A model generated the notes under the pieces. That model had not been told where the DNA came from. It made no database searches and worked only from the letters and a program-made list of their open reading frames with translations. Shown piece by piece: positions 3,884 through 46,151 of a stretch of 64,000 bases of DNA. The number at the start of each line of letters is the position of its first letter. The stretch's first letter is position 1. Both the position numbers and the translations under genes were made by a program. The stretch covers positions 124,001 to 188,000 of IMG/VR virus record IMGVR_UViG_3300046665_000548, one strand, 5' to 3'.

Positions 3884-4172
3884 CGCATGTTGCCTGGACA
3901 CCCTTCCCACGGTCTGCCACGACGTTTCGGGTATCTGATGCGTAATTGCGGCCTATCGTATCGCAACTTTTTAGTTGTCACGAGACCGTGGCAAGACTGG
4001 ACCGAGTTGGGGCCGATCAAGAAACGTCTCGGGATCAAGACCAAATACAAGGTGGAGCCTTGGACACCATCAACGACGACAGTTCGTTGGTGGATCGCGC
4101 TAGTATGCGCATTTTTATTTGGACGTTACCTCTAAACTTGACCATTGGGGATGCATCGCTGTAAATAGAGAC

Positions 4173-4211
4173 ATGCGTAACCCTCGAAACCCAATCTTTG
4201 CTGTCGATTGA
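4173..4211 (+). CDS. putative leader peptide MRNPRNPIFAVD
   Basis: ATG 5 nt after TAAATA (4162-4167); its stop lies in a hairpin (4204-4234) abutting the GAGG SD of the next gene. Confidence 0.55.
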   Translation: MRNPRNPIFAVD

Positions 4212-4242
4212 GCGGACTTTCCCGCTTTAATCGAGGTACATC

Positions 4243-4812
4243 TTGTCTAAGAAAGATTGGCGCAATCTGGGCGCTGTAACTGTTTGCGACTACAACAACC
4301 GTCGCTATCAGTTCAACTCTCTTGCCGAAGCTGCTCGTTACTTTGAACGCTACATCCCCGACCTGAAAAAGGGTCACCTGGGATATGAGCAGTTTGAGAC
4401 GCGTCCCTACCGGCGAGTTTTCATCGGCGGCGATAGCCACGTGTTCTACGACGAACTCGGGCTCACCATTCCTGTGTGGAAAGTTCAGGAAGCCTGCCGC
4501 AACCTGCCCTACGAAGCCCGCAGAAGCCGCTGGAGCCGTTTCCCTGATTACGATCATGCCAAGCACTACCGCAACGGTAGCGTGCCTGGAGTGCGTTGTA
4601 GGCGCTGGCATCGCGGCACTGGATCGCCGCGTCTCCACACTCAGTCGGAGATTCGCGAAAATGACTTTGCGAACAACTACGATGAGGACTGCGCGGAATT
4701 CCAAATCAAAACGCGCGGGCGGCGCTCTAAGCTTCCCCACCAGTGGGACGATCCAATGCGCTCGCGGCGCGGCGACGGATGGAAGCAGCACCGCCACAAT
4801 CAGTGGCGGTGA
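4243..4812 (+). CDS. Arg-rich hypothetical protein (TTG start)
   Basis: GAGG SD at 4233; 189 aa; basic C-terminus LPHQWDD...WK...QWR. Confidence 0.65.
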   Translation: MSKKDWRNLGAVTVCDYNNRRYQFNSLAEAARYFERYIPDLKKGHLGYEQFETRPYRRVFIGGDSHVFYDELGLTIPVWKVQEACRNLPYEARRSRWSRFPDYDHAKHYRNGSVPGVRCRRWHRGTGSPRLHTQSEIRENDFANNYDEDCAEFQIKTRGRRSKLPHQWDDPMRSRRGDGWKQHRHNQWR

Positions 4813-11482: not shown

Positions 11483-12637
11483 ATGACCCCAACATTCTGT
11501 GCTGCGGCTTGGTCGAACGCCGTTCTCAAAACAAACGGCCGAAGCTCTATCTGCTGCGCAAATTCGGAATCATACGAGGTGCCGCACCTCACCGAATCGC
11601 TTCAACATCCCGTTCGTCTCGCTGCACGCGAAACTATGTTGCTGGGTCAGCCCGCGCGCGGATGCGAATCCTGCTATATGACTGAGGCAAACGGATCAAA
11701 AAGCCTCAGACACGAATACAACAATATGTTCGAGAACTCGCTCGACCGCAAAAGGCTGAACGAGCCCGCATACAGCCCAATCATGTATTACGATCTCTCA
11801 CTGTCGAATACATGCAATCAGAAATGCAGAATGTGCGGCCCCGATTCCTCTACGCACTGGATAAAAGATTACGCCGCTCTCCAAAAAGAGGGAATAGCTC
11901 CGGCTCAGGAAAACCAAGCGCATAGTCAAATCAATTCAATCGATTCAATCATCGATTCGATGAAAAGAAGCCTTGTGATCAGGCTCTCACTGAAAGGGGG
12001 CGAACCCCTATACATGCGCGAGGTAAAAATTCTGCTGCGAAAGATGGTAGAAAATAATCTCCATAGACGAACAACCTTCCTCCAGATCATCACGAACGGA
12101 TCAGTAGCCGATCAAGAAACGCTCGATCTTCTTCGACATTTTCAAATCTGCTATATCACTCTAAGCATCGACGCGTGTGGTCCCCTCTACAATTACATTC
12201 GGGGATTTAACAAGCCGTTCGAAGAAGTCGAAGAATCATTCCGGAAGATCATCGAAGTGCTACCGAGACACGTCACGCCGCGCATCAACACGACTGTCCA
12301 AGCCCTCAACGTCCTGCATCTGAACGATCTCGAAATATGGATCAGAAAATTCTTCAACGGGCCAGTCGATCAATACCTGTCGTTGCTGATATACCCAAAT
12401 TTCCTCAACATCTCTAACCTTCCCCTCATCGTCAAAGAAACAGCCATCGCCCGGCTCCAGCCACTTGGAGCCAGAGCCAATCACATCATCGCTCGTCTGA
12501 ACGAAGAAGAAAATCCGGAACACTTTCGCCAGTTCTTCCCTTATACGAGGGCGCTCGATGCACGCCGCGACGAAAATCTTGAAAACGTAGCACCAGAACT
12601 TGCCGAAATGCTCAGTTACAAAAAAACTGAAAAATAG
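11483..12637 (+). CDS. radical SAM protein with N-terminal twitch/SPASM-like Cys cluster
   Basis: CNQKCRMC (CxxxCxxC), GGEP, N-terminal C...CC...CxxC; TAAATA 4 nt before the ATG. Confidence 0.85.
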   Translation: MTPTFCAAAWSNAVLKTNGRSSICCANSESYEVPHLTESLQHPVRLAARETMLLGQPARGCESCYMTEANGSKSLRHEYNNMFENSLDRKRLNEPAYSPIMYYDLSLSNTCNQKCRMCGPDSSTHWIKDYAALQKEGIAPAQENQAHSQINSIDSIIDSMKRSLVIRLSLKGGEPLYMREVKILLRKMVENNLHRRTTFLQIITNGSVADQETLDLLRHFQICYITLSIDACGPLYNYIRGFNKPFEEVEESFRKIIEVLPRHVTPRINTTVQALNVLHLNDLEIWIRKFFNGPVDQYLSLLIYPNFLNISNLPLIVKETAIARLQPLGARANHIIARLNEEENPEHFRQFFPYTRALDARRDENLENVAPELAEMLSYKKTEK

Positions 12638-12939: not shown

Positions 12940-13015
12940 GCTTCTGTAGCTCAGTTGGTAGAGCACTCGACTGAAAATCGGGGTGTCGGCGGTTCGAGCC
13001 CGCCTGGAAGCACCA
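12940..13015 (+). tRNA. tRNA-Phe(GAA)
   Basis: Cloverleaf, loop CT-GAA-AA, encoded CCA. Confidence 0.95.
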
Positions 13016-13031
13016 ATTCAATGCTGGTCAC

Positions 13032-13115
13032 GCGGGCGTGGCGGAATGGTTTAGACGCGCTGGCTTCAAACCCCAGTTCTTCGGAGTGGGGGTTCAAGTC
13101 CCTCCGCCCGCACCA
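13032..13115 (+). tRNA. tRNA-Leu(CAA)
   Basis: Class II, loop TT-CAA-AC, C31-C39 mismatch, A73, CCA. Confidence 0.85.
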
Positions 13116-13130
13116 GCATATACCAAGTTT

Positions 13131-13206
13131 AAGGGTGTAGCTCAATTGGTAGAGCGTCGGTCTCCAAAACCGAAGGTTGCAGGTTCGATGCCTGTCGCCC
13201 TTGCCA
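13131..13206 (+). tRNA. tRNA-Trp(CCA)
   Basis: Loop CT-CCA-AA, G73, CCA. Confidence 0.95.
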
Positions 13207-13207
13207 C

Positions 13208-13284
13208 GGTCTTATAGCTCAACTGGATAGAGCACCTGACTACGAATCAGGAGGTTTCAGGTTCGAGTCCTGATAAGACCGCCA
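13208..13284 (+). tRNA. tRNA-Arg(ACG)
   Basis: Loop CT-ACG-AA, A20, CCA. Confidence 0.95.
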
Positions 13285-13330
13285 CCTTATAGTCCACTTG
13301 GGCGCATCCACGGGGTGCTCTAGGCCGACT

Positions 13331-13405
13331 GGTCCGTTAGCGCAGCGGTAGCGCATTCGCCTTCGAAGCGACTGGTCGGCGGTTCGAATCCGTCACGGAC
13401 CTCCA
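13331..13405 (+). tRNA. tRNA-Arg(TCG), atypical identity elements
   Basis: Loop CT-TCG-AA, U73, no A20, CCA. Confidence 0.85.
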
Positions 13406-13448
13406 AATACGTGAAGGCTACGATAGTGCCAGCGAGACGATTTTTGAT

Positions 13449-13524
13449 GGGCGTATAACTCAGTTGGTAGAGTAGCTGACTCTTAATCAGTTTGTCGCAG
13501 GTTCGAACCCTGCTGCGCCCACCA
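13449..13524 (+). tRNA. tRNA-Lys(CTT)
   Basis: Loop CT-CTT-AA, A73, CCA. Confidence 0.95.
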
Positions 13525-13535
13525 AAAATCGTTTT

Positions 13536-13622
13536 GAGCCGGTGTCCCGAGTGGCGAAGGGGGCGGACTTTTAATCCGTTGTTGAGAGACCATCGTGGGT
13601 TCGAGTCCCACCCGGCTCCCCA
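13536..13622 (+). tRNA. tRNA with TTT (Lys) anticodon in a class II, Tyr-like body
   Basis: GAGCCGG/CCGGCTC acceptor, loop CT-TTT-AA, 15-nt variable region, C73, CCA. Confidence 0.8.
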
Positions 13623-13673
13623 TCTATCTCAGTTTCGCGAAGCTAAATACTAGTTTAGCTCAGTAGGACTGAA

Positions 13674-14213
13674 ATGTTTTCTTGTGATGTTTGCTCTAAA
13701 GATTTTGCCACTTATCGCGGCTTAAACGGACACAAAAGACTCCATGGAGAATCCAGGGGGACGTATGTTGAAGGCTCTAGAGTTGGCGTTGGAGGGAAGA
13801 AACCGTTTAGACAAAACAAACCGTGCCAACGGTGCGGTCAAGAGTCTTTGAACAGCAAATACTGTTCGAATAAGTGTCAGAACGCTTATGAAAAAAGCTC
13901 TTTGATTGAGGACTGGCTGAACGGAAAAGACTCAGGTCTAGCTGCGGGCAACCGTCTGAAGAAATCAATACGTGATCATCTTCTTGCAGAAGCAGAATAC
14001 AAGTGCTCTTCATGCGGTTGGGACAAGATCAATCCAAAGAGCGGAAAGACTCCGTTAGAGATAGATCACATCGACGGAAATTCGGACAATTGCGTGAAAG
14101 ATAACCTAAGGGTCTTGTGCCCTAACTGTCATTCTCTGACGCCCACATATCGGGCGTTAAATTACGGTCGCGCAAATAAAGGTAGACTAAGATACTCTCG
14201 CCTGTGTAAATAG
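13674..14213 (+). CDS. HNH homing endonuclease with N-terminal C2H2 zinc finger
   Basis: CDVC...H-x3-H, LEIDHIDGN...NLRVLCPNCH; inserted within the tRNA cluster. Confidence 0.9.
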   Translation: MFSCDVCSKDFATYRGLNGHKRLHGESRGTYVEGSRVGVGGKKPFRQNKPCQRCGQESLNSKYCSNKCQNAYEKSSLIEDWLNGKDSGLAAGNRLKKSIRDHLLAEAEYKCSSCGWDKINPKSGKTPLEIDHIDGNSDNCVKDNLRVLCPNCHSLTPTYRALNYGRANKGRLRYSRLCK

Positions 14214-14220
14214 GGGTATT

Positions 14221-14296
14221 GGCCGGTTAGCTCAGCGGTAGTAGCGTTTCCTTTACATGGAAAATGTCGGGAGTTCGATCCTCTCACCGGCTACCA
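14221..14296 (+). tRNA. tRNA-Val(TAC)
   Basis: Loop TT-TAC-AT, A73, CCA. Confidence 0.9.
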
Positions 14297-14995: not shown

Positions 14996-15754
14996 GTGAA
15001 ACAGATGTCTGCAAAATTCGATAGCCTCGTTGAACGTTTGGTCAAGAAGATGGGTCTGTCTCAGACTCCAGTTCCTGGCTTCATCATTGGCCTCAGCGGC
15101 ACCGATTCAATCATTGCATTCCTCTTGGCTTACCGTGCATGTGAGCGCCTCGACCTCCCTCCTGGTGGGATGGCTGATCGCCTTCTTGGCGTTCACTACA
15201 AATCTGGCGATAAGGTCGATTGGTTCGAGGCTGAGATCATGCCTTGGCTTGCTGCCGAATGTCCCAAAGCTACTTTGATAACTCGCGTGCCACGTGGCGG
15301 AAACGCCGATCCTCAGCGTTGGGCGGATATGCACCTACGTGCGTTAAATTCAAACGTTGATGAGAACACCACGCGATACACGCCGCACGATGCAGGCAAG
15401 AACTATTGGGTTGCCGGGACCATCAACGCTACTGAAAAGGTTCTTGGCAAGTTCAGCATGCTCGCGGAGAGCGTCAGCATCCAACTTATTCAGACCGTGT
15501 GGAAGAGCGAGATCATGGCTCTTTGTGAAGAGTATGGTGTGCCGTCGATTGCGATGGAGATGTCGCGTATTCCTGATTGTCTATGCGGGCGTGACGAGAT
15601 CGCGGCCAACAACATTGAACTTATTGATCAAATCATTCGTCACAAGGTGAAGCCATCTGAGCATCCACCTGAATTGCTCGATACGCTGTTCTCGTACATC
15701 GCGATGGTCAGGTCAGAAAATGACTTTAAGAATCGCATTCCGTACACAATTTGA
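14996..15754 (+). CDS. NAD synthetase (NadE)-like PP-loop protein
   Basis: IIGLSGTDS PP-loop, GTINATE...LG, WKSEIMALCEEYGVP. Confidence 0.65.
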   Translation: MKQMSAKFDSLVERLVKKMGLSQTPVPGFIIGLSGTDSIIAFLLAYRACERLDLPPGGMADRLLGVHYKSGDKVDWFEAEIMPWLAAECPKATLITRVPRGGNADPQRWADMHLRALNSNVDENTTRYTPHDAGKNYWVAGTINATEKVLGKFSMLAESVSIQLIQTVWKSEIMALCEEYGVPSIAMEMSRIPDCLCGRDEIAANNIELIDQIIRHKVKPSEHPPELLDTLFSYIAMVRSENDFKNRIPYTI

Positions 15755-35391: not shown

Positions 35392-36193
35392 TGCAGATCG
35401 AGAACCGCATTAGTATCATCAAGCGTCGCATCAGCGATCTTGAGCAACGATCAGAAGAAAATGGCGATCATGTTTACCAGTTAAGGGATGATATCTTGTC
35501 TGGAAAGATCAGCCAAAGTGAATTTACCGCTAGACTAGATCGGGTTCGCGAAGTACATTCCAGTCTTCGTGTCGAGCTTGATGCTTTGGCGCGCGAAGCT
35601 GGAGCGTTACGTGGAGCAATTACATCGTGATTATCTAGATATCTTGGCGAAGAAGTTTCGCGCCGAGGTAATGATCGTAACTGCCGATGCTTTTATTGAT
35701 AGGCATCTCGACACTGGTCTGACAATCGAAGACATGGCGACGCGGTTGAACACCAGCGCCGATGCGATTCGCCGTATGTTCGACATGAATGACCCCGCTA
35801 CCAAACGGGGTCTCGGTCTGTTGTCCGATATGTGCGCCGCTTTGGGATGCCGCCCGGTCGTTACCATTCGCGATATCGGCAGTCCTCCTGAAATCACTAC
35901 AGATCGCGAAACTCGTACCGGGGACCATCTGCTCCAAGTGGCGAAATCGCTCGGGTGGCCCGACGATGGCGAGGGCGCGCTTGAGTTCGTTATGCGGAGG
36001 ACACGTGAGGTTGCGCTCGAAGATGCAGCAGCCACGACCGCGCTCCGAGAGATCGCGTCTATCGGTGCCCAAATCACTGATCCGGACAACGTATACGGGG
36101 TTCAGATGACGAACCTTGCCATCGCCGCGTTGGCGCGTCCTCCTGGTTCACAAAACACTTGACGTTTTTCTAATTCCTGTCATTGGATACGGC

Positions 36194-38002
36194 ATGCACG
36201 AATATCGTTCCCATACTTGCGACTCGCTGTCGCCATCACAAATCGATCAGACAGTTCGCCTGTCCGGTTGGTGTCACCGTATCCGTAACCATGGTGGTAT
36301 CCTTTTCATCGATCTTCGCGATCACTACGGCATCACGCAGTGCGTGATCGATCCCGCAGTTCTCCCTCAGGCTGAAAGCCTTGGTGAAGAATGGGTGATT
36401 CGCGTCGATGGTACAGTGCGATTTCGACCCCCAGGTACCGAGAATTCAAAACTCTCGACAGGAGAGATCGAGGTAAAGGTAGCTTCGCTTGACGTGCTCG
36501 GACCGGTCGTCGGGGCGCTGCCGATGCCTGTCGCGCATCTCCATTCCACGAGCGACGGTACGTTGCAGGAAGTCGAATATCCAGAAGACCTTCGGTTGAA
36601 ATATCGATTCTTGGACCTTCGCCGCGAACGGCTGCACGAGAACATGATGAAGCGAATGAAAATCATTCGCTGGCTGCGTCATCGCATGGAGGACGAAGGC
36701 TTCTTCGAATTCCAGACGCCCATCCTTACCGCATCGTCCCCAGAAGGGGCGCGAGACTTTCTCGTGCCTGCTCGGTTGCATCCAGGCAAGTTCTACGCGT
36801 TGCCGCAGGCTCCGCAGCAGTTCAAGCAACTTACCATGGTTGCTGGCTTCGACCGATACTTTCAAATTGCGCCATGCTTCCGTGATGAAGCTGCACGTTC
36901 AGATCGGTCACCGGGCGAGTTCTATCAACTCGACATCGAAATGAGTTTCGTAACTCAGGAAGACGTGTTTCGGGTTGTCGAACCGACGATTCGAGATTTG
37001 TTCAAGGAGTTCGGCGGCGACAAAGCCATCACCGAGACCTTCCCGCGTATTCCGTACAAGGAAGCGTTGCTGCGTTTTGGTACCGATAAGCCAGACCTGC
37101 GTAACCCTCTGCGTATTGTGGACGTGTCCAAGGCTCTCCAAGCCGACGACATGACACTCGCCCCTTTCAAGAAAGGCGTCGGCAGAGCTATCGTTGTGCC
37201 AGCCGCGATGCTGGCCGGGAAGTCGCGCAAGTGGTTCAAGGATATGGAAGGCTGGGCACAATCCCAAGGCGCGGCCGGTTTAGGATATCTGAGCGTCATG
37301 CTGACCGATGGTCGCGTGAGCTTCGCTGGACCGCTTGCTAAGTTTTTCGGTGAGCAATCTAGCGAGTTGGTTCGCGTCGCCGCCGACACAATCTTTGACG
37401 AGGGAGATGTCATTTTCTTCGCCGTTGGCGAGGAAAGCTCCACCATCAAATTCAGTGGACTGCTTCGTACAAAGCTCGGAGAGGAGCTTGGTCTGATCGA
37501 GCAAGACCGGTTCGAGTTCTGCTGGATCGTGGATTATCCCATGTTCGAGTGGAATTCTGACGAGAAGAAGATCGACTTCTCCCACAACCCCTTCTCGATG
37601 CCTCAGGGCGGCCTGGAGGCGCTTGAGGGCGATCCATTAGGTGTTCTTGCCTATCAGTACGATATCGTCTGTAATGGCATCGAGCTTTCGTCTGGTGCCA
37701 TCCGGAACCATCGACCAGATATCATGGAGAAGGCGTTCTCCATCGCTGGCTACGACAAGGAGGTGTTGGAAGAAAAGTTCGGCGGCATGCTGAATGCATT
37801 CCGTTGCGGAGCACCACCGCATGGTGGAATTGCACCGGGTATCGACCGCATGGTTATGCTTCTGTGCGAAGCTGAGAACCTGCGCGATGTCGTGCTGTTC
37901 CCAATGAACCAGAAAGGACAAGACCTGATGATGGGCGCTCCGTCTTCAGTAACTGCAAAGCAACTTGACGAGTTGAATATCAGGATCATTCCGAGGAAAT
38001 AA
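36194..38002 (+). CDS. aspS: aspartyl-tRNA synthetase (non-discriminating type)
   Basis: [50 protein letters not shown]. Confidence 0.95.
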
Positions 38003-44864: not shown

Positions 44865-46151
44865 ATGCATGACATTAACTACATTCGCGATAATCCAGAT
44901 GCTTTCGATGCTGGTCTGGCGGCGCGCGGCCTCAAATCTCAGTCCGAAATATTGATCAACATCGATCAGTCGCGTCGGCACGCCCTGACCGAGCTTCAGC
45001 AAAGACAATCCAAGCGCAACGAGTTGTCGGCGCAAATTGGCGCGGCGATGAAGGCTGGTCAACGCGATGAGGCCGAACGCCTTAAGACAGAGGTGGTAAC
45101 GCTTAAGCACGCAATCGAAGATTGGACCGGTCGCGCTGCAACGTCTCAGACCATACTAACGCATGAACTGGAGCGTATCCCGAATCTACCGGCCGCCGAT
45201 GTGCCCGTTGGCAAGGATGAAACTGCAAATCATTTGGAAACAGTTTGGGAGCCGGACGGTGGGAGGCGCGTGATCGCCAATCCGAAGCCTCACTGGGAGC
45301 TAGGCGAGGCCCTGGGGATGATGGACTTCCAAGCTGGCACGATGCTGGCTGGGCCGAGAAGCACTGTTCTCCGTGGTCCTCTGGCCAAGCTAGCGCGGGG
45401 TCTCGGCAACTGGATGATCGACACTATGACGTTGGAGGGATACAGCGAGGTCGATGTGCCTTGTATCGTCAACGGTGAGATCATGCACGGCACAGGCCAA
45501 CTCCCCAAGTTCGAGGCCGACGCTTATCGGCTGAACGATGCCGACCAATATCTGATCCCCACGGCCGAAGTACCTCTCACCAATCTTGTACGAGACCAGA
45601 TCGTAGATGAGGATGCGCTTCCTCTTCTGTATACGGCTCTGACCCCTTGCTTTCGAAAAGAAGCAGGATCGGCTGGCCGCGACGTGCGTGGCATGATGCG
45701 CCAGCACCAGTTCATGAAATGCGAAGTCGTGATGATCACTCAGCCAGAGTTTTCTGAGATCGACCACATGAAAATGCTCATGCATGTAGGCAACCTCCTC
45801 AAACGACTTTTCCTACCTCACCGGTACATGAAGTTGTGCAGCGGGGACATGGGCTTTTCGGCAAAGAAGACTTACGATTTCGAGGTTTGGCTTCCGAGCC
45901 AAGATGCGTATCGTGAGATTTCTTCCGTGTCGAATTGCGGAGATTTCCAGGCTAGGCGAATGAACGCTCGCTTCCGCAAAAAGGATGGCTCGATCCACTA
46001 TCTGCACACTCTCAATGGGTCTGCTATGGCTGTCGGCCGGACGTTGATTGCCGTCATGGAGAACTACCAGAACGACGACGGATCGATCACGATCCCAGAC
46101 GTTCTCATTCCCTATGTTGGTTTCGGTAAAATCGAAGCGGGCATGCGCTGA
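44865..46151 (+). CDS. serS: seryl-tRNA synthetase
   Basis: GTGQLPKF, YLIPTAEVPL, FRKEAGSAGRDVRGMMRQHQF, EISSVSNCGDFQARR, TLNGSAMAVGR. Confidence 0.96.
   Translation: MHDINYIRDNPDAFDAGLAARGLKSQSEILINIDQSRRHALTELQQRQSKRNELSAQIGAAMKAGQRDEAERLKTEVVTLKHAIEDWTGRAATSQTILTHELERIPNLPAADVPVGKDETANHLETVWEPDGGRRVIANPKPHWELGEALGMMDFQAGTMLAGPRSTVLRGPLAKLARGLGNWMIDTMTLEGYSEVDVPCIVNGEIMHGTGQLPKFEADAYRLNDADQYLIPTAEVPLTNLVRDQIVDEDALPLLYTALTPCFRKEAGSAGRDVRGMMRQHQFMKCEVVMITQPEFSEIDHMKMLMHVGNLLKRLFLPHRYMKLCSGDMGFSAKKTYDFEVWLPSQDAYREISSVSNCGDFQARRMNARFRKKDGSIHYLHTLNGSAMAVGRTLIAVMENYQNDDGSITIPDVLIPYVGFGKIEAGMR

What the first reader, a model, noticed from the sequence alone, without database searches (positions are those of the whole stretch)
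13536..13622. tRNA with a Lys(UUU) anticodon on a class II Tyr-like scaffold
Seen: an 87-nt tRNA with D-arm TCCCGAGTGGCGAAGGG and anticodon stem GCGGA/TCCGT resembling bacterial tRNA-Tyr, a 15-nt variable region, anticodon TTT and discriminator C. Normal tRNA-Lys is class I with A73. Established: tRNA-Lys(UUU) is the target of PrrC and of PARIS (AriB). Inference: a re-scaffolded AAA decoder that escapes those nucleases, or a missense tRNA inserting another amino acid at AAA.
Basis: partly seen in the sequence, partly recalled or inferred. Interest (0 to 1): 0.75.

Follow-up and report, generated by a model that had tools for sequence, protein, structure and literature searches.

The report
Phage lysine tRNA with tyrosine-type body
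A 608-kb phage carries a lysine tRNA (anticodon UUU) whose acceptor stem and anticodon loop match lysine tRNAs of its likely host group while its core, including a long extra arm, matches that group's tyrosine tRNA; it belongs to a widespread phage family of such tRNAs that I could not find described, and it may bear on how phages keep translating when bacteria attack lysine tRNA.

Summary
Window 13536-13622 (+) is an 87-nt tRNA with anticodon UUU, a 15-nt variable arm, discriminator C73 and an encoded CCA. It is a mosaic. Its acceptor stem (7/7 pairs) and anticodon loop equal the ordinary tRNA-Lys(UUU) of two sampled Alphaproteobacteria. Its D arm and anticodon stem equal alphaproteobacterial tRNA-Tyr (28 of 30 nt), and the variable arm has Tyr-type geometry. 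It is not unique: at least 27 distinct long-arm Lys(UUU/CUU) tRNAs occur in phage contigs, including cultured Caulobacter, Brevundimonas, Ruegeria and Rhodobacter phages, where they are annotated simply as tRNA-Lys. Their cloverleaf covaries strongly. None appeared in 101 alphaproteobacterial genomes apart from one phage-like contig. A parallel long-arm tRNA-Asn family includes phiKZ. Most likely this is a true AAA-reading lysine tRNA charged by the host LysRS, probably the class I enzyme common in Alphaproteobacteria. AAA codons in a phage gene align with lysines. The missense readings (Tyr, Ser) are disfavoured. Nuclease escape is plausible but untested. I found no published description of such tRNAs.

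The parts
13536..13622 (+). Long-arm (class II-bodied) tRNA-Lys(UUU), 87 nt including the encoded CCA
   Evidence: ARAGORN; Rfam 49.8 bits; family covariation
13536..13542 (+). Acceptor stem 5' strand GAGCCGG (pairs with 13612-13618); Lys-type
   Evidence: 7/7 identical to class I tRNA-Lys(UUU) of genomes G026 and G046, 2/7 to host tRNA-Tyr; unique among 587 collected tRNAs
13543..13567 (+). Connector, D arm, position 26 and anticodon-stem 5' strand; Tyr-type
   Evidence: 24/25 identical to alphaproteobacterial tRNA-Tyr(GUA) L072 (19/20 plus 5/5); unlike host tRNA-Lys
13568..13574 (+). Anticodon loop CTTTTAA, anticodon TTT at 13570-13572; Lys-type
   Evidence: 7/7 identical to host tRNA-Lys(UUU); 5/7 to tRNA-Tyr, differing at positions 34 and 36
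13575..13579 (+). Anticodon-stem 3' strand TCCGT; Tyr-type
   Evidence: 4/5 to host tRNA-Tyr, 2/5 to host tRNA-Lys
13580..13594 (+). 15-nt variable arm: 1 nt, 3-bp stem, 4-nt loop, 4 unpaired 3' nt; Tyr-type geometry
   Evidence: ARAGORN bracket structure; class comparison: Tyr 3-bp stem with 3 unpaired nt, Ser 5-7-bp stem with 1 unpaired nt
13595..13611 (+). T arm GTGGG-TTCGAGT-CCCAC
   Evidence: 16/17 to G046 tRNA-Lys(UUU), 15/17 to host tRNA-Tyr; the stem is nearly invariant in the family
13612..13618 (+). Acceptor stem 3' strand CCGGCTC (A2:U71); Lys-type
   Evidence: 7/7 to host tRNA-Lys(UUU)
13619..13619 (+). Discriminator C73, matching neither Lys-type nor Tyr-type (both A)
   Evidence: Sequence; family discriminators A12/U11/C1, true Tyr A13/13, class I Lys A25/26
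13449..13524 (+). Ordinary class I tRNA-Lys(CUU), 11 nt upstream; the partner isoacceptor
   Evidence: ARAGORN; the same adjacency of class I Lys(CUU) and long-arm Lys(UUU) occurs in L003 and L004 and in a relative's contig
12940..14296 (+). tRNA array: Phe, Leu, Trp, Arg, Arg, Lys(CUU), long-arm Lys(UUU), [HNH ORF], Val
   Evidence: ARAGORN and Rfam
13674..14213 (+). 179-aa ORF with a C2H2 zinc finger and an HNH endonuclease motif, inserted between Lys(UUU) and Val; context, probably mobile
   Evidence: ORF list; Pfam zf-C2H2_6 27.4 bits, HNH 21-22 bits, near threshold; a relative's contig has 74 nt in place of these 628 nt
36116..38002 (+). Context: phage-encoded aspartyl-tRNA synthetase. 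The phage encodes no LysRS, so lysine charging must use the host enzyme
   Evidence: NF001750 763.7 bits; no class I or class II LysRS in the genome; 50-62% identical to alphaproteobacterial AspRS
44865..46151 (+). Context: phage-encoded seryl-tRNA synthetase, relevant to the Ser-missense rival
   Evidence: TIGR00414 469.6 bits

Best explanation
It is a working phage tRNA that reads AAA (and probably AAG by wobble) as lysine, built as a mosaic. SHOWN: the acceptor stem and anticodon loop are those of an alphaproteobacterial tRNA-Lys(UUU). The D arm, anticodon stem and long variable arm are those of alphaproteobacterial tRNA-Tyr. It belongs to a conserved, covarying, phage-borne family of long-arm Lys(UUU/CUU) tRNAs. 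INFERRED: it is charged with lysine by the host lysyl-tRNA synthetase, because the phage has none of its own. That enzyme is probably the class I LysRS used by about 70% of sampled Alphaproteobacteria. Class I LysRS reads U35, U36 and the acceptor stem around pair 2:71, cares little about base 73, and (from general knowledge of class I enzymes) approaches from the side away from the variable arm. The tyrosine determinants A73 and G34 have been removed, so TyrRS should not take it. MORE SPECULATIVE (about 0.35): the Tyr-type body is kept because it hides the tRNA from factors that recognise the body or anticodon stem of host tRNA-Lys, such as defence nucleases. The stated confidence refers to the identity and charging parts only.
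For: Real tRNA. Mosaic, with segment identities against host tRNA-Lys(UUU) and host tRNA-Tyr. That acceptor stem occurs in tRNAs of G026 and G046 only in Lys(UUU), and both genomes have class I LysRS. Role in the set: the genome has 57 tRNAs covering all 20 amino acids, with class I Lys(CUU) plus this one as the only UUU. Family: 27 distinct members with both UUU and CUU anticodons. phiCbK-like phages have only long-arm Lys tRNAs. AAA means Lys: 9 AAA codons of the phage AspRS gene lie opposite K 35% and R 19% in 30 homologues, like AAG (K 36%, R 13%), while TAT and TAC lie opposite Y 72-86%. AAA is 15 per 1000 codons. Not Tyr: true Tyr tRNAs have A73 in 13/13, the family has A12/U11/C1, and A73 and U35 are critical for TyrRS (PMC9976931). 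Not Ser: 3-bp stem with 4 unpaired nt, against Ser's 5-7 bp with 1 unpaired nt and G73. Host enzyme: no LysRS in the phage. Alphaproteobacterial host: alpha-type tmRNA, AspRS 50-62% identical, and every cultured carrier infects Alphaproteobacteria. Class I LysRS passes the cut-off in 71/101 and class II in 25/101 sampled Alphaproteobacteria. U71 occurs in 10/27 family members (G2.U71 in 7) and in 4/4 sampled host tRNA-Lys(UUU). G2.U71 is essential for Borrelia class I LysRS, and A73 is marginal for it. Defence context: PARIS AriB and a bacterial Schlafen cleave tRNA-Lys(UUU). The anticodon stem differs from sampled host tRNA-Lys at 4 of 5 pairs. The phage carries RtcB and a T4 Rnl1-type RNA ligase.
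Against: There are no expression, processing, modification or charging data. The sequencing runs held only relatives' DNA. The host is inferred, not known. C73 departs from the A73 of all sampled host tRNA-Lys, and would lower charging by a class II LysRS. The exact acceptor match was found in only 2 of 101 sampled genomes. In the other testable case (G001) the long-arm tRNA's acceptor differs from that genome's own tRNA-Lys, so acceptor mimicry is not a family rule. Most family members were fished with a D-arm pattern, which inflates the apparent Tyr-likeness of the family and its clustering with long-arm Asn. One member sits on a contig binned with a Bacteroidota MAG that lacks class I LysRS. 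Long-arm tRNA-Asn in Pseudomonas phage phiKZ must be handled by a class II enzyme, so a long arm does not require a class I synthetase. T5 escapes PARIS by one base-pair swap, so a body swap is not needed for that escape. The codon test rests on 9 AAA codons in one gene and cannot exclude low-level missense. The MFE fold does not give the canonical anticodon arm.
Confidence: 0.65

Rival explanations
1. Same identity (a lysine tRNA), but the Tyr-type body has no function of its own. It would be a historical accident: recombination between neighbouring tRNA genes, or an anticodon shift of a tRNA-Tyr copy followed by acceptor adaptation. It would be tolerated because the host LysRS reads only the anticodon and acceptor end, and then spread among phages by descent and exchange of tRNA arrays.
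For: Lys and Asn identity rest mainly on the anticodon plus the acceptor end, so a body swap can be nearly neutral. Long-arm Lys, long-arm Asn and some Tyr tRNAs cluster together (SH-aLRT 97). Tyr GUA, Asn GUU and Lys UUU/CUU anticodons are one or two substitutions apart. An HNH endonuclease sits beside the gene and is absent from a relative, which shows that the array is recombinationally active.
Against: The type persists in many unrelated phage groups with full covariation, yet was not seen in 101 host-class genomes. That asymmetry suggests a phage-specific benefit. The Tyr determinants A73 and G34 were specifically removed. The clustering is partly an artefact of my search pattern.
Confidence: 0.25
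2. Missense tRNA charged with tyrosine by the host TyrRS or by the phage's own TyrRS, placing Tyr at AAA codons.
For: The core and variable arm are Tyr-type, and U35, a major TyrRS determinant, is kept. The phage encodes its own TyrRS, whose specificity is unknown.
Against: A73 is C here, while true Tyr tRNAs have A73 in 13/13. G34 and A36 are changed. The acceptor stem is that of tRNA-Lys(UUU). AAA codons align with K/R and not Y/F. AAA is frequent at 15 per 1000 codons. phiCbK-like phages carry the family without any synthetase reported or any Tyr tRNA.
Confidence: 0.05
3. Missense tRNA charged with serine (or leucine) because SerRS and LeuRS recognise long-arm bodies and ignore the anticodon, as in nematode nev-tRNAs and bacterial allo-tRNAs.
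For: It has a long variable arm, and the phage encodes its own SerRS in this window. GenBank annotators occasionally labelled phiCbK-group members tRNA-Ser.
Against: The variable arm is a 3-bp stem with 4 unpaired 3' nt. Ser tRNAs, including this phage's own, have 5-7-bp stems with 1 unpaired nt and G73. Leu tRNAs have A73 in 38/38. C73 fits neither. AAA codons do not align with S or L.
Confidence: 0.03
4. Not a translational tRNA at all: a decaying duplicate, or a tRNA-like RNA used as a decoy, primer or regulator.
For: There are no expression data. The MFE fold is not the canonical cloverleaf. C73 is unique within the family.
Against: All universal tertiary positions are invariant across the family (U8, A14, G18, G19, U33, G53-T54-T55-C56, A58). 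CCA is encoded. Covariation is full. A relative keeps the tRNA with 4 changes in 75 nt. It fills the otherwise empty UUU slot in the phage's tRNA set.
Confidence: 0.05

Closest known systems
Phage T5 tRNA-Lys, which neutralises PARIS (Burman et al. 2024, PMC11464382)
   Same: A phage-encoded tRNA-Lys(UUU) isoacceptor that differs from the host tRNA in the anticodon stem, the region the AriB nuclease reads and cuts (between positions 40 and 41).
   Different: T5's tRNA is an ordinary class I tRNA with a base-pair swap. Here the whole core (D arm, anticodon stem, variable arm) is of tRNA-Tyr type. Resistance to any nuclease has not been tested for the window tRNA.
Bacterial (alphaproteobacterial) tRNA-Tyr(GUA)
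   Same: The connector, D arm, position 26 and anticodon stem are 28/30 identical. The variable arm has the same geometry of a 3-bp stem with several unpaired 3' nucleotides.
   Different: The anticodon is UUU, not GUA. The discriminator is C, not A. The acceptor stem is 2/7 identical on each strand.
Alphaproteobacterial class I tRNA-Lys(UUU)
   Same: The acceptor stem is 7/7 pairs identical (G026, G046). The anticodon loop is 7/7. The T arm is 16/17 (G046). U71 is present.
   Different: 87 nt with a 15-nt variable arm instead of 76 nt with a 5-nt loop. The D arm and anticodon stem are unrelated. C73 replaces A73.
tRNA-Lys genes of Caulobacter phages (phiCbK group, Bertelyvirus), Brevundimonas, Ruegeria and Rhodobacter phages; tRNA-Asn of Pseudomonas phage phiKZ
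   Same: The same kind of object: long-arm tRNAs of 85-90 nt with Lys or Asn anticodons, already in GenBank.
   Different: They are annotated only by anticodon. The phiCbK genome paper counts them without structural comment. Their acceptor stems and discriminators differ from the window tRNA.
Long-arm tRNAs with non-cognate anticodons: nematode nev-tRNAs (charged with Leu) and bacterial allo-tRNAs (charged with Ser); recalled from my own knowledge, not checked here
   Same: A class II body carrying an anticodon of a class I-type amino acid.
   Different: Those bodies belong to synthetases that ignore the anticodon, so they mistranslate. Allo-tRNAs also have 8/4 or 9/3 acceptor/T stacks. Here the body is Tyr-type, whose synthetase reads the anticodon, the stack is the normal 7/5, and the acceptor stem is cognate for the anticodon.

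Membership tests
tRNA (Rfam RF00005) | Cloverleaf with 7-bp acceptor stem, D arm, 5-bp anticodon stem, 7-nt loop with U33, 5-bp T stem, and conserved tertiary positions | tested here: met
   Rfam 49.8 bits against 29; ARAGORN; invariant U8, A14, G18, G19, U33, T54, T55, C56, A58; covariation
Bacterial tRNA-Lys | Anticodon UUU or CUU in a CUNUUAA-type loop | tested here: met
   Loop CTTTTAA, identical to sampled host tRNA-Lys(UUU)
Bacterial tRNA-Lys | Acceptor stem of tRNA-Lys type | tested here: met
   7/7 pairs identical to tRNA-Lys(UUU) of G026 and G046; in those genomes no other tRNA has it
Bacterial tRNA-Lys | Discriminator A73 | tested here: not met
   C73; class I Lys tRNAs have A in 25/26
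Bacterial tRNA-Lys | Class I body with a 4-5-nt variable loop | tested here: not met
   15-nt variable arm with a 3-bp stem
Bacterial tRNA-Lys | Accepts lysine from LysRS | not testable with these tools
   Needs aminoacylation assays. Indirect support only: AAA codons align with K/R
Bacterial tRNA-Tyr | Anticodon GUA (G34, U35) | tested here: not met
   UUU; only U35 is kept
Bacterial tRNA-Tyr | Discriminator A73 | tested here: not met
   C73; true Tyr tRNAs have A in 13/13; A73 is critical for TyrRS
Bacterial tRNA-Tyr | Tyr-type D arm and long variable arm (short stem, several unpaired 3' nt) | tested here: met
   19/20 plus 5/5 plus 4/5 identity to host tRNA-Tyr; arm geometry
tRNA-Ser | Variable arm with a 5-7-bp stem and about 1 unpaired 3' nt; G73 | tested here: not met
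   3-bp stem, 4 unpaired nt, C73
Phage long-arm tRNA-Lys family (defined here) | UUU or CUU anticodon with a 7/5 cloverleaf, a variable arm of 10 nt or more, and a CCCGAG..GG..AGGG-type D arm in most members | tested here: met
   Nearest neighbours up to 83% identical with the anticodon masked; aligned in A1
Nuclease-escaping phage tRNAs (T5 tRNA-Lys against PARIS; T5 tRNA-Tyr against retron/Septu) | Same anticodon as the targeted host tRNA but changed at the nuclease's recognition site | tested here: inconclusive
   The anticodon stem differs from sampled host-class tRNA-Lys at 4 of 5 pairs, but the true host and its defences are unknown
Nuclease-escaping phage tRNAs | Resists cleavage and rescues infection | not testable with these tools
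   Needs cleavage and plaque assays
Missense long-arm tRNAs (nev-tRNA, allo-tRNA) | Body belongs to an anticodon-blind synthetase (Leu or Ser); allo-tRNAs have an 8/4 or 9/3 stack | tested here: not met
   Tyr-type body, 7/5 stack

The most novel reading that the evidence does not exclude
Phages, especially those of Alphaproteobacteria, maintain a distinct class of body-swapped tRNAs. The identity elements of tRNA-Lys (and in a parallel family tRNA-Asn) sit on a tRNA-Tyr-type long-arm core. The host synthetase, for Lys the class I LysRS, still charges them correctly, while enzymes that recognise the body or anticodon stem of the host's own tRNA-Lys or tRNA-Asn do not see them. Such enzymes could be defence nucleases or the phage's own host-shutoff factors. 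This would be a general counter-defence principle, and a natural exception to the rule that only Leu, Ser, Tyr and Sec tRNAs are class II.
Probability: 0.3. Interest if true: 0.85.

Novelty: new variant of a known kind. Interest (0 to 1): 0.72.

Why it matters
Textbook tRNA biology holds that in bacteria only Leu, Ser, Tyr and Sec tRNAs have a long variable arm. This is a lysine tRNA that breaks the rule, and it is one of a conserved phage family. A parallel asparagine family includes the much-studied phage phiKZ. The mosaic shows which parts of a tRNA can be exchanged while keeping identity: the acceptor stem and anticodon stay, the core is swapped. That bears on the identity rules of class I LysRS and on the design of orthogonal tRNAs. 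tRNA-Lys(UUU) is a preferred target of several anti-phage nucleases (PrrC, PARIS, Schlafen-type). If the swapped body protects the tRNA, this would be a new and widespread counter-defence. It can be tested directly in the tractable Caulobacter/phiCbK system. It also matters for annotation: isotype-specific tRNA models may mislabel these genes, and some GenBank records call them tRNA-Ser.

Tried and rejected
1. Stop-codon recoding as context for the odd tRNAs. Standard-code frames of at least 150 aa already cover 79% of the genome, and TAG ends 73 of 458 long ORFs. Rejected as a genome-wide feature.
2. A phage-encoded LysRS or AsnRS that might co-evolve with the tRNA. None was found; the only class IIb enzyme is AspRS.
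3. Expression evidence from public runs. The four runs hold only fragments of relatives or conserved tRNAs, and no run holds the phage.
4. Acceptor-stem mimicry as a rule for the whole family. It fails in G001, where the long-arm tRNA on contig C12 and the chromosomal tRNA-Lys(UUU) have different acceptor stems.
5. The first pattern search for the acceptor stem returned nothing because my second gap was one base too short. Corrected.
6. Tree-based origin. The alignment has only 67 columns and the sample was selected by a D-arm pattern, so the cluster of long-arm Lys, long-arm Asn and Tyr is only suggestive.
7. Thermodynamic folding as support for the cloverleaf. Not informative.
8. Nine literature searches found no description of long-arm Lys or Asn tRNAs. 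Subscription journals are not covered, so a prior description cannot be excluded.
9. Complex prediction with a LysRS was considered and not run. Its RNA controls are shuffles, so it could not separate this tRNA from any other tRNA.

Full report
THE OBSERVATION. ARAGORN finds a tRNA-Lys(ttt) of 87 nt at window 13536-13622 on the + strand. Rfam's tRNA model scores it 49.8 bits against a threshold of 29. From the sequence it has a 7-bp acceptor stem GAGCCGG/CCGGCTC and a D arm TCCCGAGTGGCGAAGGG. The anticodon stem is GCGGA/TCCGT with loop CTTTTAA. The 15-nt variable region has a 3-bp stem, a 4-nt loop and four unpaired 3' nucleotides. The T arm is normal, the discriminator is C73, and CCA is encoded.

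THE GENOME. The window is bases 124001-188000 of a 607,744-bp virus record that is estimated complete.
- The genome holds 57 tRNAs covering all 20 amino acids, plus a two-piece tmRNA.
- Its only Lys tRNAs are an ordinary class I Lys(CUU) at window 13449-13524 and this long-arm Lys(UUU), 11 nt downstream.
- The tmRNA matches the Alphaproteobacteria model, 65 bits against a threshold of 50.
- The phage's AspRS is 50-62% identical to alphaproteobacterial AspRS.
- So the host is probably an alphaproteobacterium. This is an inference.
- The standard genetic code fits.

NOT A ONE-OFF.
- A pattern for the D arm plus a CTTTTAA loop found 14 other viral contigs. All carry long-arm Lys(UUU) tRNAs of 81-90 nt.
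- The CUU version found 6 more contigs.
- Cultured phages carry the type, annotated simply as tRNA-Lys and occasionally as tRNA-Ser: the phiCbK group and Bertelyvirus of Caulobacter, Brevundimonas phages, Ruegeria/Roseobacter phages and a Rhodobacter phage. All of these hosts are Alphaproteobacteria.
- The same pattern in about 186,000 cellular species found only three real tRNAs, all on tRNA-dense MAG contigs.
- An alignment of 27 distinct members (A1) shows 98.1% pairing in the four stems and compensatory changes at 18 of 20 pairs. Shuffled and slid controls fall far below. The universal tertiary positions are invariant.
- This is therefore a conserved, functional tRNA family.
- A DNA run holds a relative's contig with the same order Arg, Lys(CUU), long-arm Lys(UUU), Val, with 4 differences in 75 nt.

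WHAT THE SCAFFOLD IS.
- With the anticodon masked, the nearest neighbours are other long-arm Lys tRNAs (up to 83%), then long-arm Asn (74%), then true Tyr (72%).
- The variable-arm geometry matches Tyr and not Ser or Leu.
- Covariance model R1, built from the family, was run on 101 alphaproteobacterial genomes. Its top hit was one phage-like contig (G001, a 229.7-kb contig with a tRNA array). After that it found only the hosts' own tRNA-Tyr(GUA) and tRNA-Ser genes. No cellular long-arm Lys tRNA was seen in the genomes searched.
- Against one such tRNA-Tyr (L072), the window tRNA is 19/20 identical over the connector, D arm and position 26, and 5/5 and 4/5 over the two anticodon-stem strands.
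- This core is closer to host-type tRNA-Tyr than to the phage's own tRNA-Tyr, whose D arm differs.

WHAT THE ENDS ARE.
- Host tRNA-Lys genes fetched from the same genomes include a class I tRNA-Lys(UUU) in G026 whose acceptor stem is identical to the window tRNA at 7 of 7 pairs.
- A pattern search found this stem together with a UUU loop in 2 of 101 genomes, G026 and G046. Both are ordinary tRNA-Lys(UUU) genes.
- G046 also shares the T stem, giving 16/17 over the T arm.
- In those two genomes no other tRNA has this acceptor stem. None of the 587 other collected tRNAs has it either.
- The molecule is therefore a mosaic. The acceptor stem, anticodon loop and T arm are Lys-type. The D arm, anticodon stem and variable arm are Tyr-type. 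The discriminator C matches neither.

WHICH AMINO ACID.
- Published identity rules (PMC9976931): TyrRS depends critically on A73 and U35. Class II LysRS reads the three anticodon bases and A73. Class I LysRS reads U35, U36 and the acceptor stem (G2.U71 is essential in Borrelia), and A73 is marginal for it.
- The window tRNA lacks A73, G34 and A36, so tyrosine is unlikely.
- True Tyr tRNAs in my sample have A73 in 13/13, whereas the family has A12/U11/C1.
- The arm is not Ser-type, and C73 fits neither Ser (G73) nor Leu (A73).
- The phage encodes AspRS, SerRS, TyrRS, TrpRS and ThrRS but no LysRS of either class. A lysine tRNA must therefore use the host enzyme.
- Among 101 sampled Alphaproteobacteria, 71 have class I LysRS above the cut-off and 25 have class II, almost complementarily. 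The unpublished genome G035 is one of the 25; no other claim rests on it.
- G026, G046 and G001 have the class I enzyme.
- U71 occurs in all four sampled host tRNA-Lys(UUU) genes and in 10 of 27 family members.
- Direct test of meaning: in the phage AspRS gene, the 9 AAA codons lie opposite K (35%) and R (19%) in 30 homologues, like the 20 AAG codons (K 36%, R 13%). TAT and TAC lie opposite Y at 72-86%.
- AAA makes up 31% of Lys codons, 15 per 1000, so an efficient missense tRNA would damage the whole proteome.

WHY A TYR BODY. This part is inference.
- tRNA-Lys(UUU) is cut by PARIS AriB between positions 40 and 41. AriB recognises the anticodon stem-loop, and T5 escapes with a base-pair swap (PMC11464382).
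- A bacterial Schlafen nuclease also cleaves tRNA-Lys(UUU) (PMC13056530).
- The window tRNA keeps only the loop-closing pair of the sampled host tRNA-Lys anticodon stems.
- The phage carries RtcB and a T4 Rnl1-type ligase. From my own knowledge, Rnl1 is the enzyme family T4 uses to repair cleaved tRNA-Lys.
- This fits an escape role but does not show one. A neutral origin by recombination or anticodon shift is a serious rival.
- The long arm may be tolerated because class I synthetases approach from the side away from the variable arm (my own knowledge). However, phiKZ's long-arm tRNA-Asn must work with a class II enzyme, so this cannot be the whole story.

NOVELTY. The genes exist in GenBank as plain tRNA-Lys. 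The phiCbK genome paper counts them without comment (PMC3556154). Nine full-text searches found no description of long-arm Lys or Asn tRNAs. I rate it a new structural variant of a known kind (a phage-encoded tRNA), with the caveat that subscription literature was not searched.

Noticed in passing
Genome 343310-343395 (outside the window); L016:1492-1578 (phiKZ); L018:2996-3082; L029-L054: A parallel family of long-arm tRNA-Asn(GUU) of 85-91 nt. This phage has one beside a normal Asn tRNA. So do phiKZ-like Pseudomonas phages, a 635-kb uncultured phage and 26 IMG/VR contigs. They keep U1:A72 (21/25) and G73 (22/25), the Asn and amidotransferase determinants, on a Tyr-like arm.
   Followed up: partly
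Genome 4091-4178 and 4180-4256 (outside the window): Two adjacent tRNAs with the amber-reading anticodon CUA, one long-armed (88 nt, A73) and one class I (77 nt, G73). Yet TAG is used as an ordinary stop at 73 of 458 long ORFs, and the standard code fits the genome.
   Followed up: partly
Genome 1944-2020 (outside the window): A tRNA with an 8-nt anticodon loop (four-base anticodon GGAA by ARAGORN), the shape of a +1 frameshift suppressor.
   Followed up: no
window 13674-14213 (+): A 179-aa ORF with an N-terminal C2H2 zinc finger and a C-terminal HNH motif lies between Lys(UUU) and Val(UAC). A relative's contig has 74 nt in place of this 628-nt segment, so it looks like a mobile homing endonuclease inside the tRNA array.
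   Followed up: partly
window 36116-38002 (+), 44865-46151 (+); genome about 455.2-456.4 kb (-), 33.5-34.5 kb (+), 592 kb (-): The phage encodes its own AspRS, SerRS, TyrRS, TrpRS and ThrRS. A sixth class II-type fragment near 590.9-591.4 kb was not identified.
   Followed up: partly
Genome 576377-576796 (L070:372-749): A phage-encoded two-piece tmRNA of the alphaproteobacterial type, tag ANDNVAVSEYALAA. Two other carriers of long-arm Lys tRNAs (L012, L014) also encode permuted tmRNAs.
   Followed up: partly
Genome 530480-531505 (-) and 492555-493139 (-): An RtcB-type RNA ligase (181 bits) and a T4 Rnl1-type RNA ligase (102 bits), possible tRNA-repair functions.
   Followed up: no
Alignment A1, pair 2:71 and position 73: Within the long-arm Lys family the acceptor end falls into two main types: G2.U71 with A73 (6 members) and G2:C71 with U73 (8 members). 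The window tRNA (A2:U71, C73) fits neither. Unexplained; it may reflect different host LysRS types.
   Followed up: no
L002:5230-5313 (-); L012:4093-4174 (+); L010:7516-7596 (-): Other phages carry 81-84-nt tRNAs with extended variable regions and Cys(GCA) or Gln(UUG) anticodons. ARAGORN labels the L012 one Ile(aat), but its loop reads TTGCAAA. The body-swap phenomenon may reach beyond Lys and Asn.
   Followed up: no
window 11483-12637 (+) and 14996-15754 (+): The tRNA array is flanked by a radical SAM protein (51 bits) and a weak NAD-synthase-like PP-loop protein (23 bits). Their functions are unknown, and no link to tRNA modification was shown.
   Followed up: no
G001 contig C12 (L023, L071, L119): A 229.7-kb contig binned with a Methyloligellaceae MAG carries a phage-like tRNA array including a long-arm Lys(UUU). 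Its size matches phiCbK-like phage genomes, so it may be a phage or prophage rather than chromosome.
   Followed up: partly
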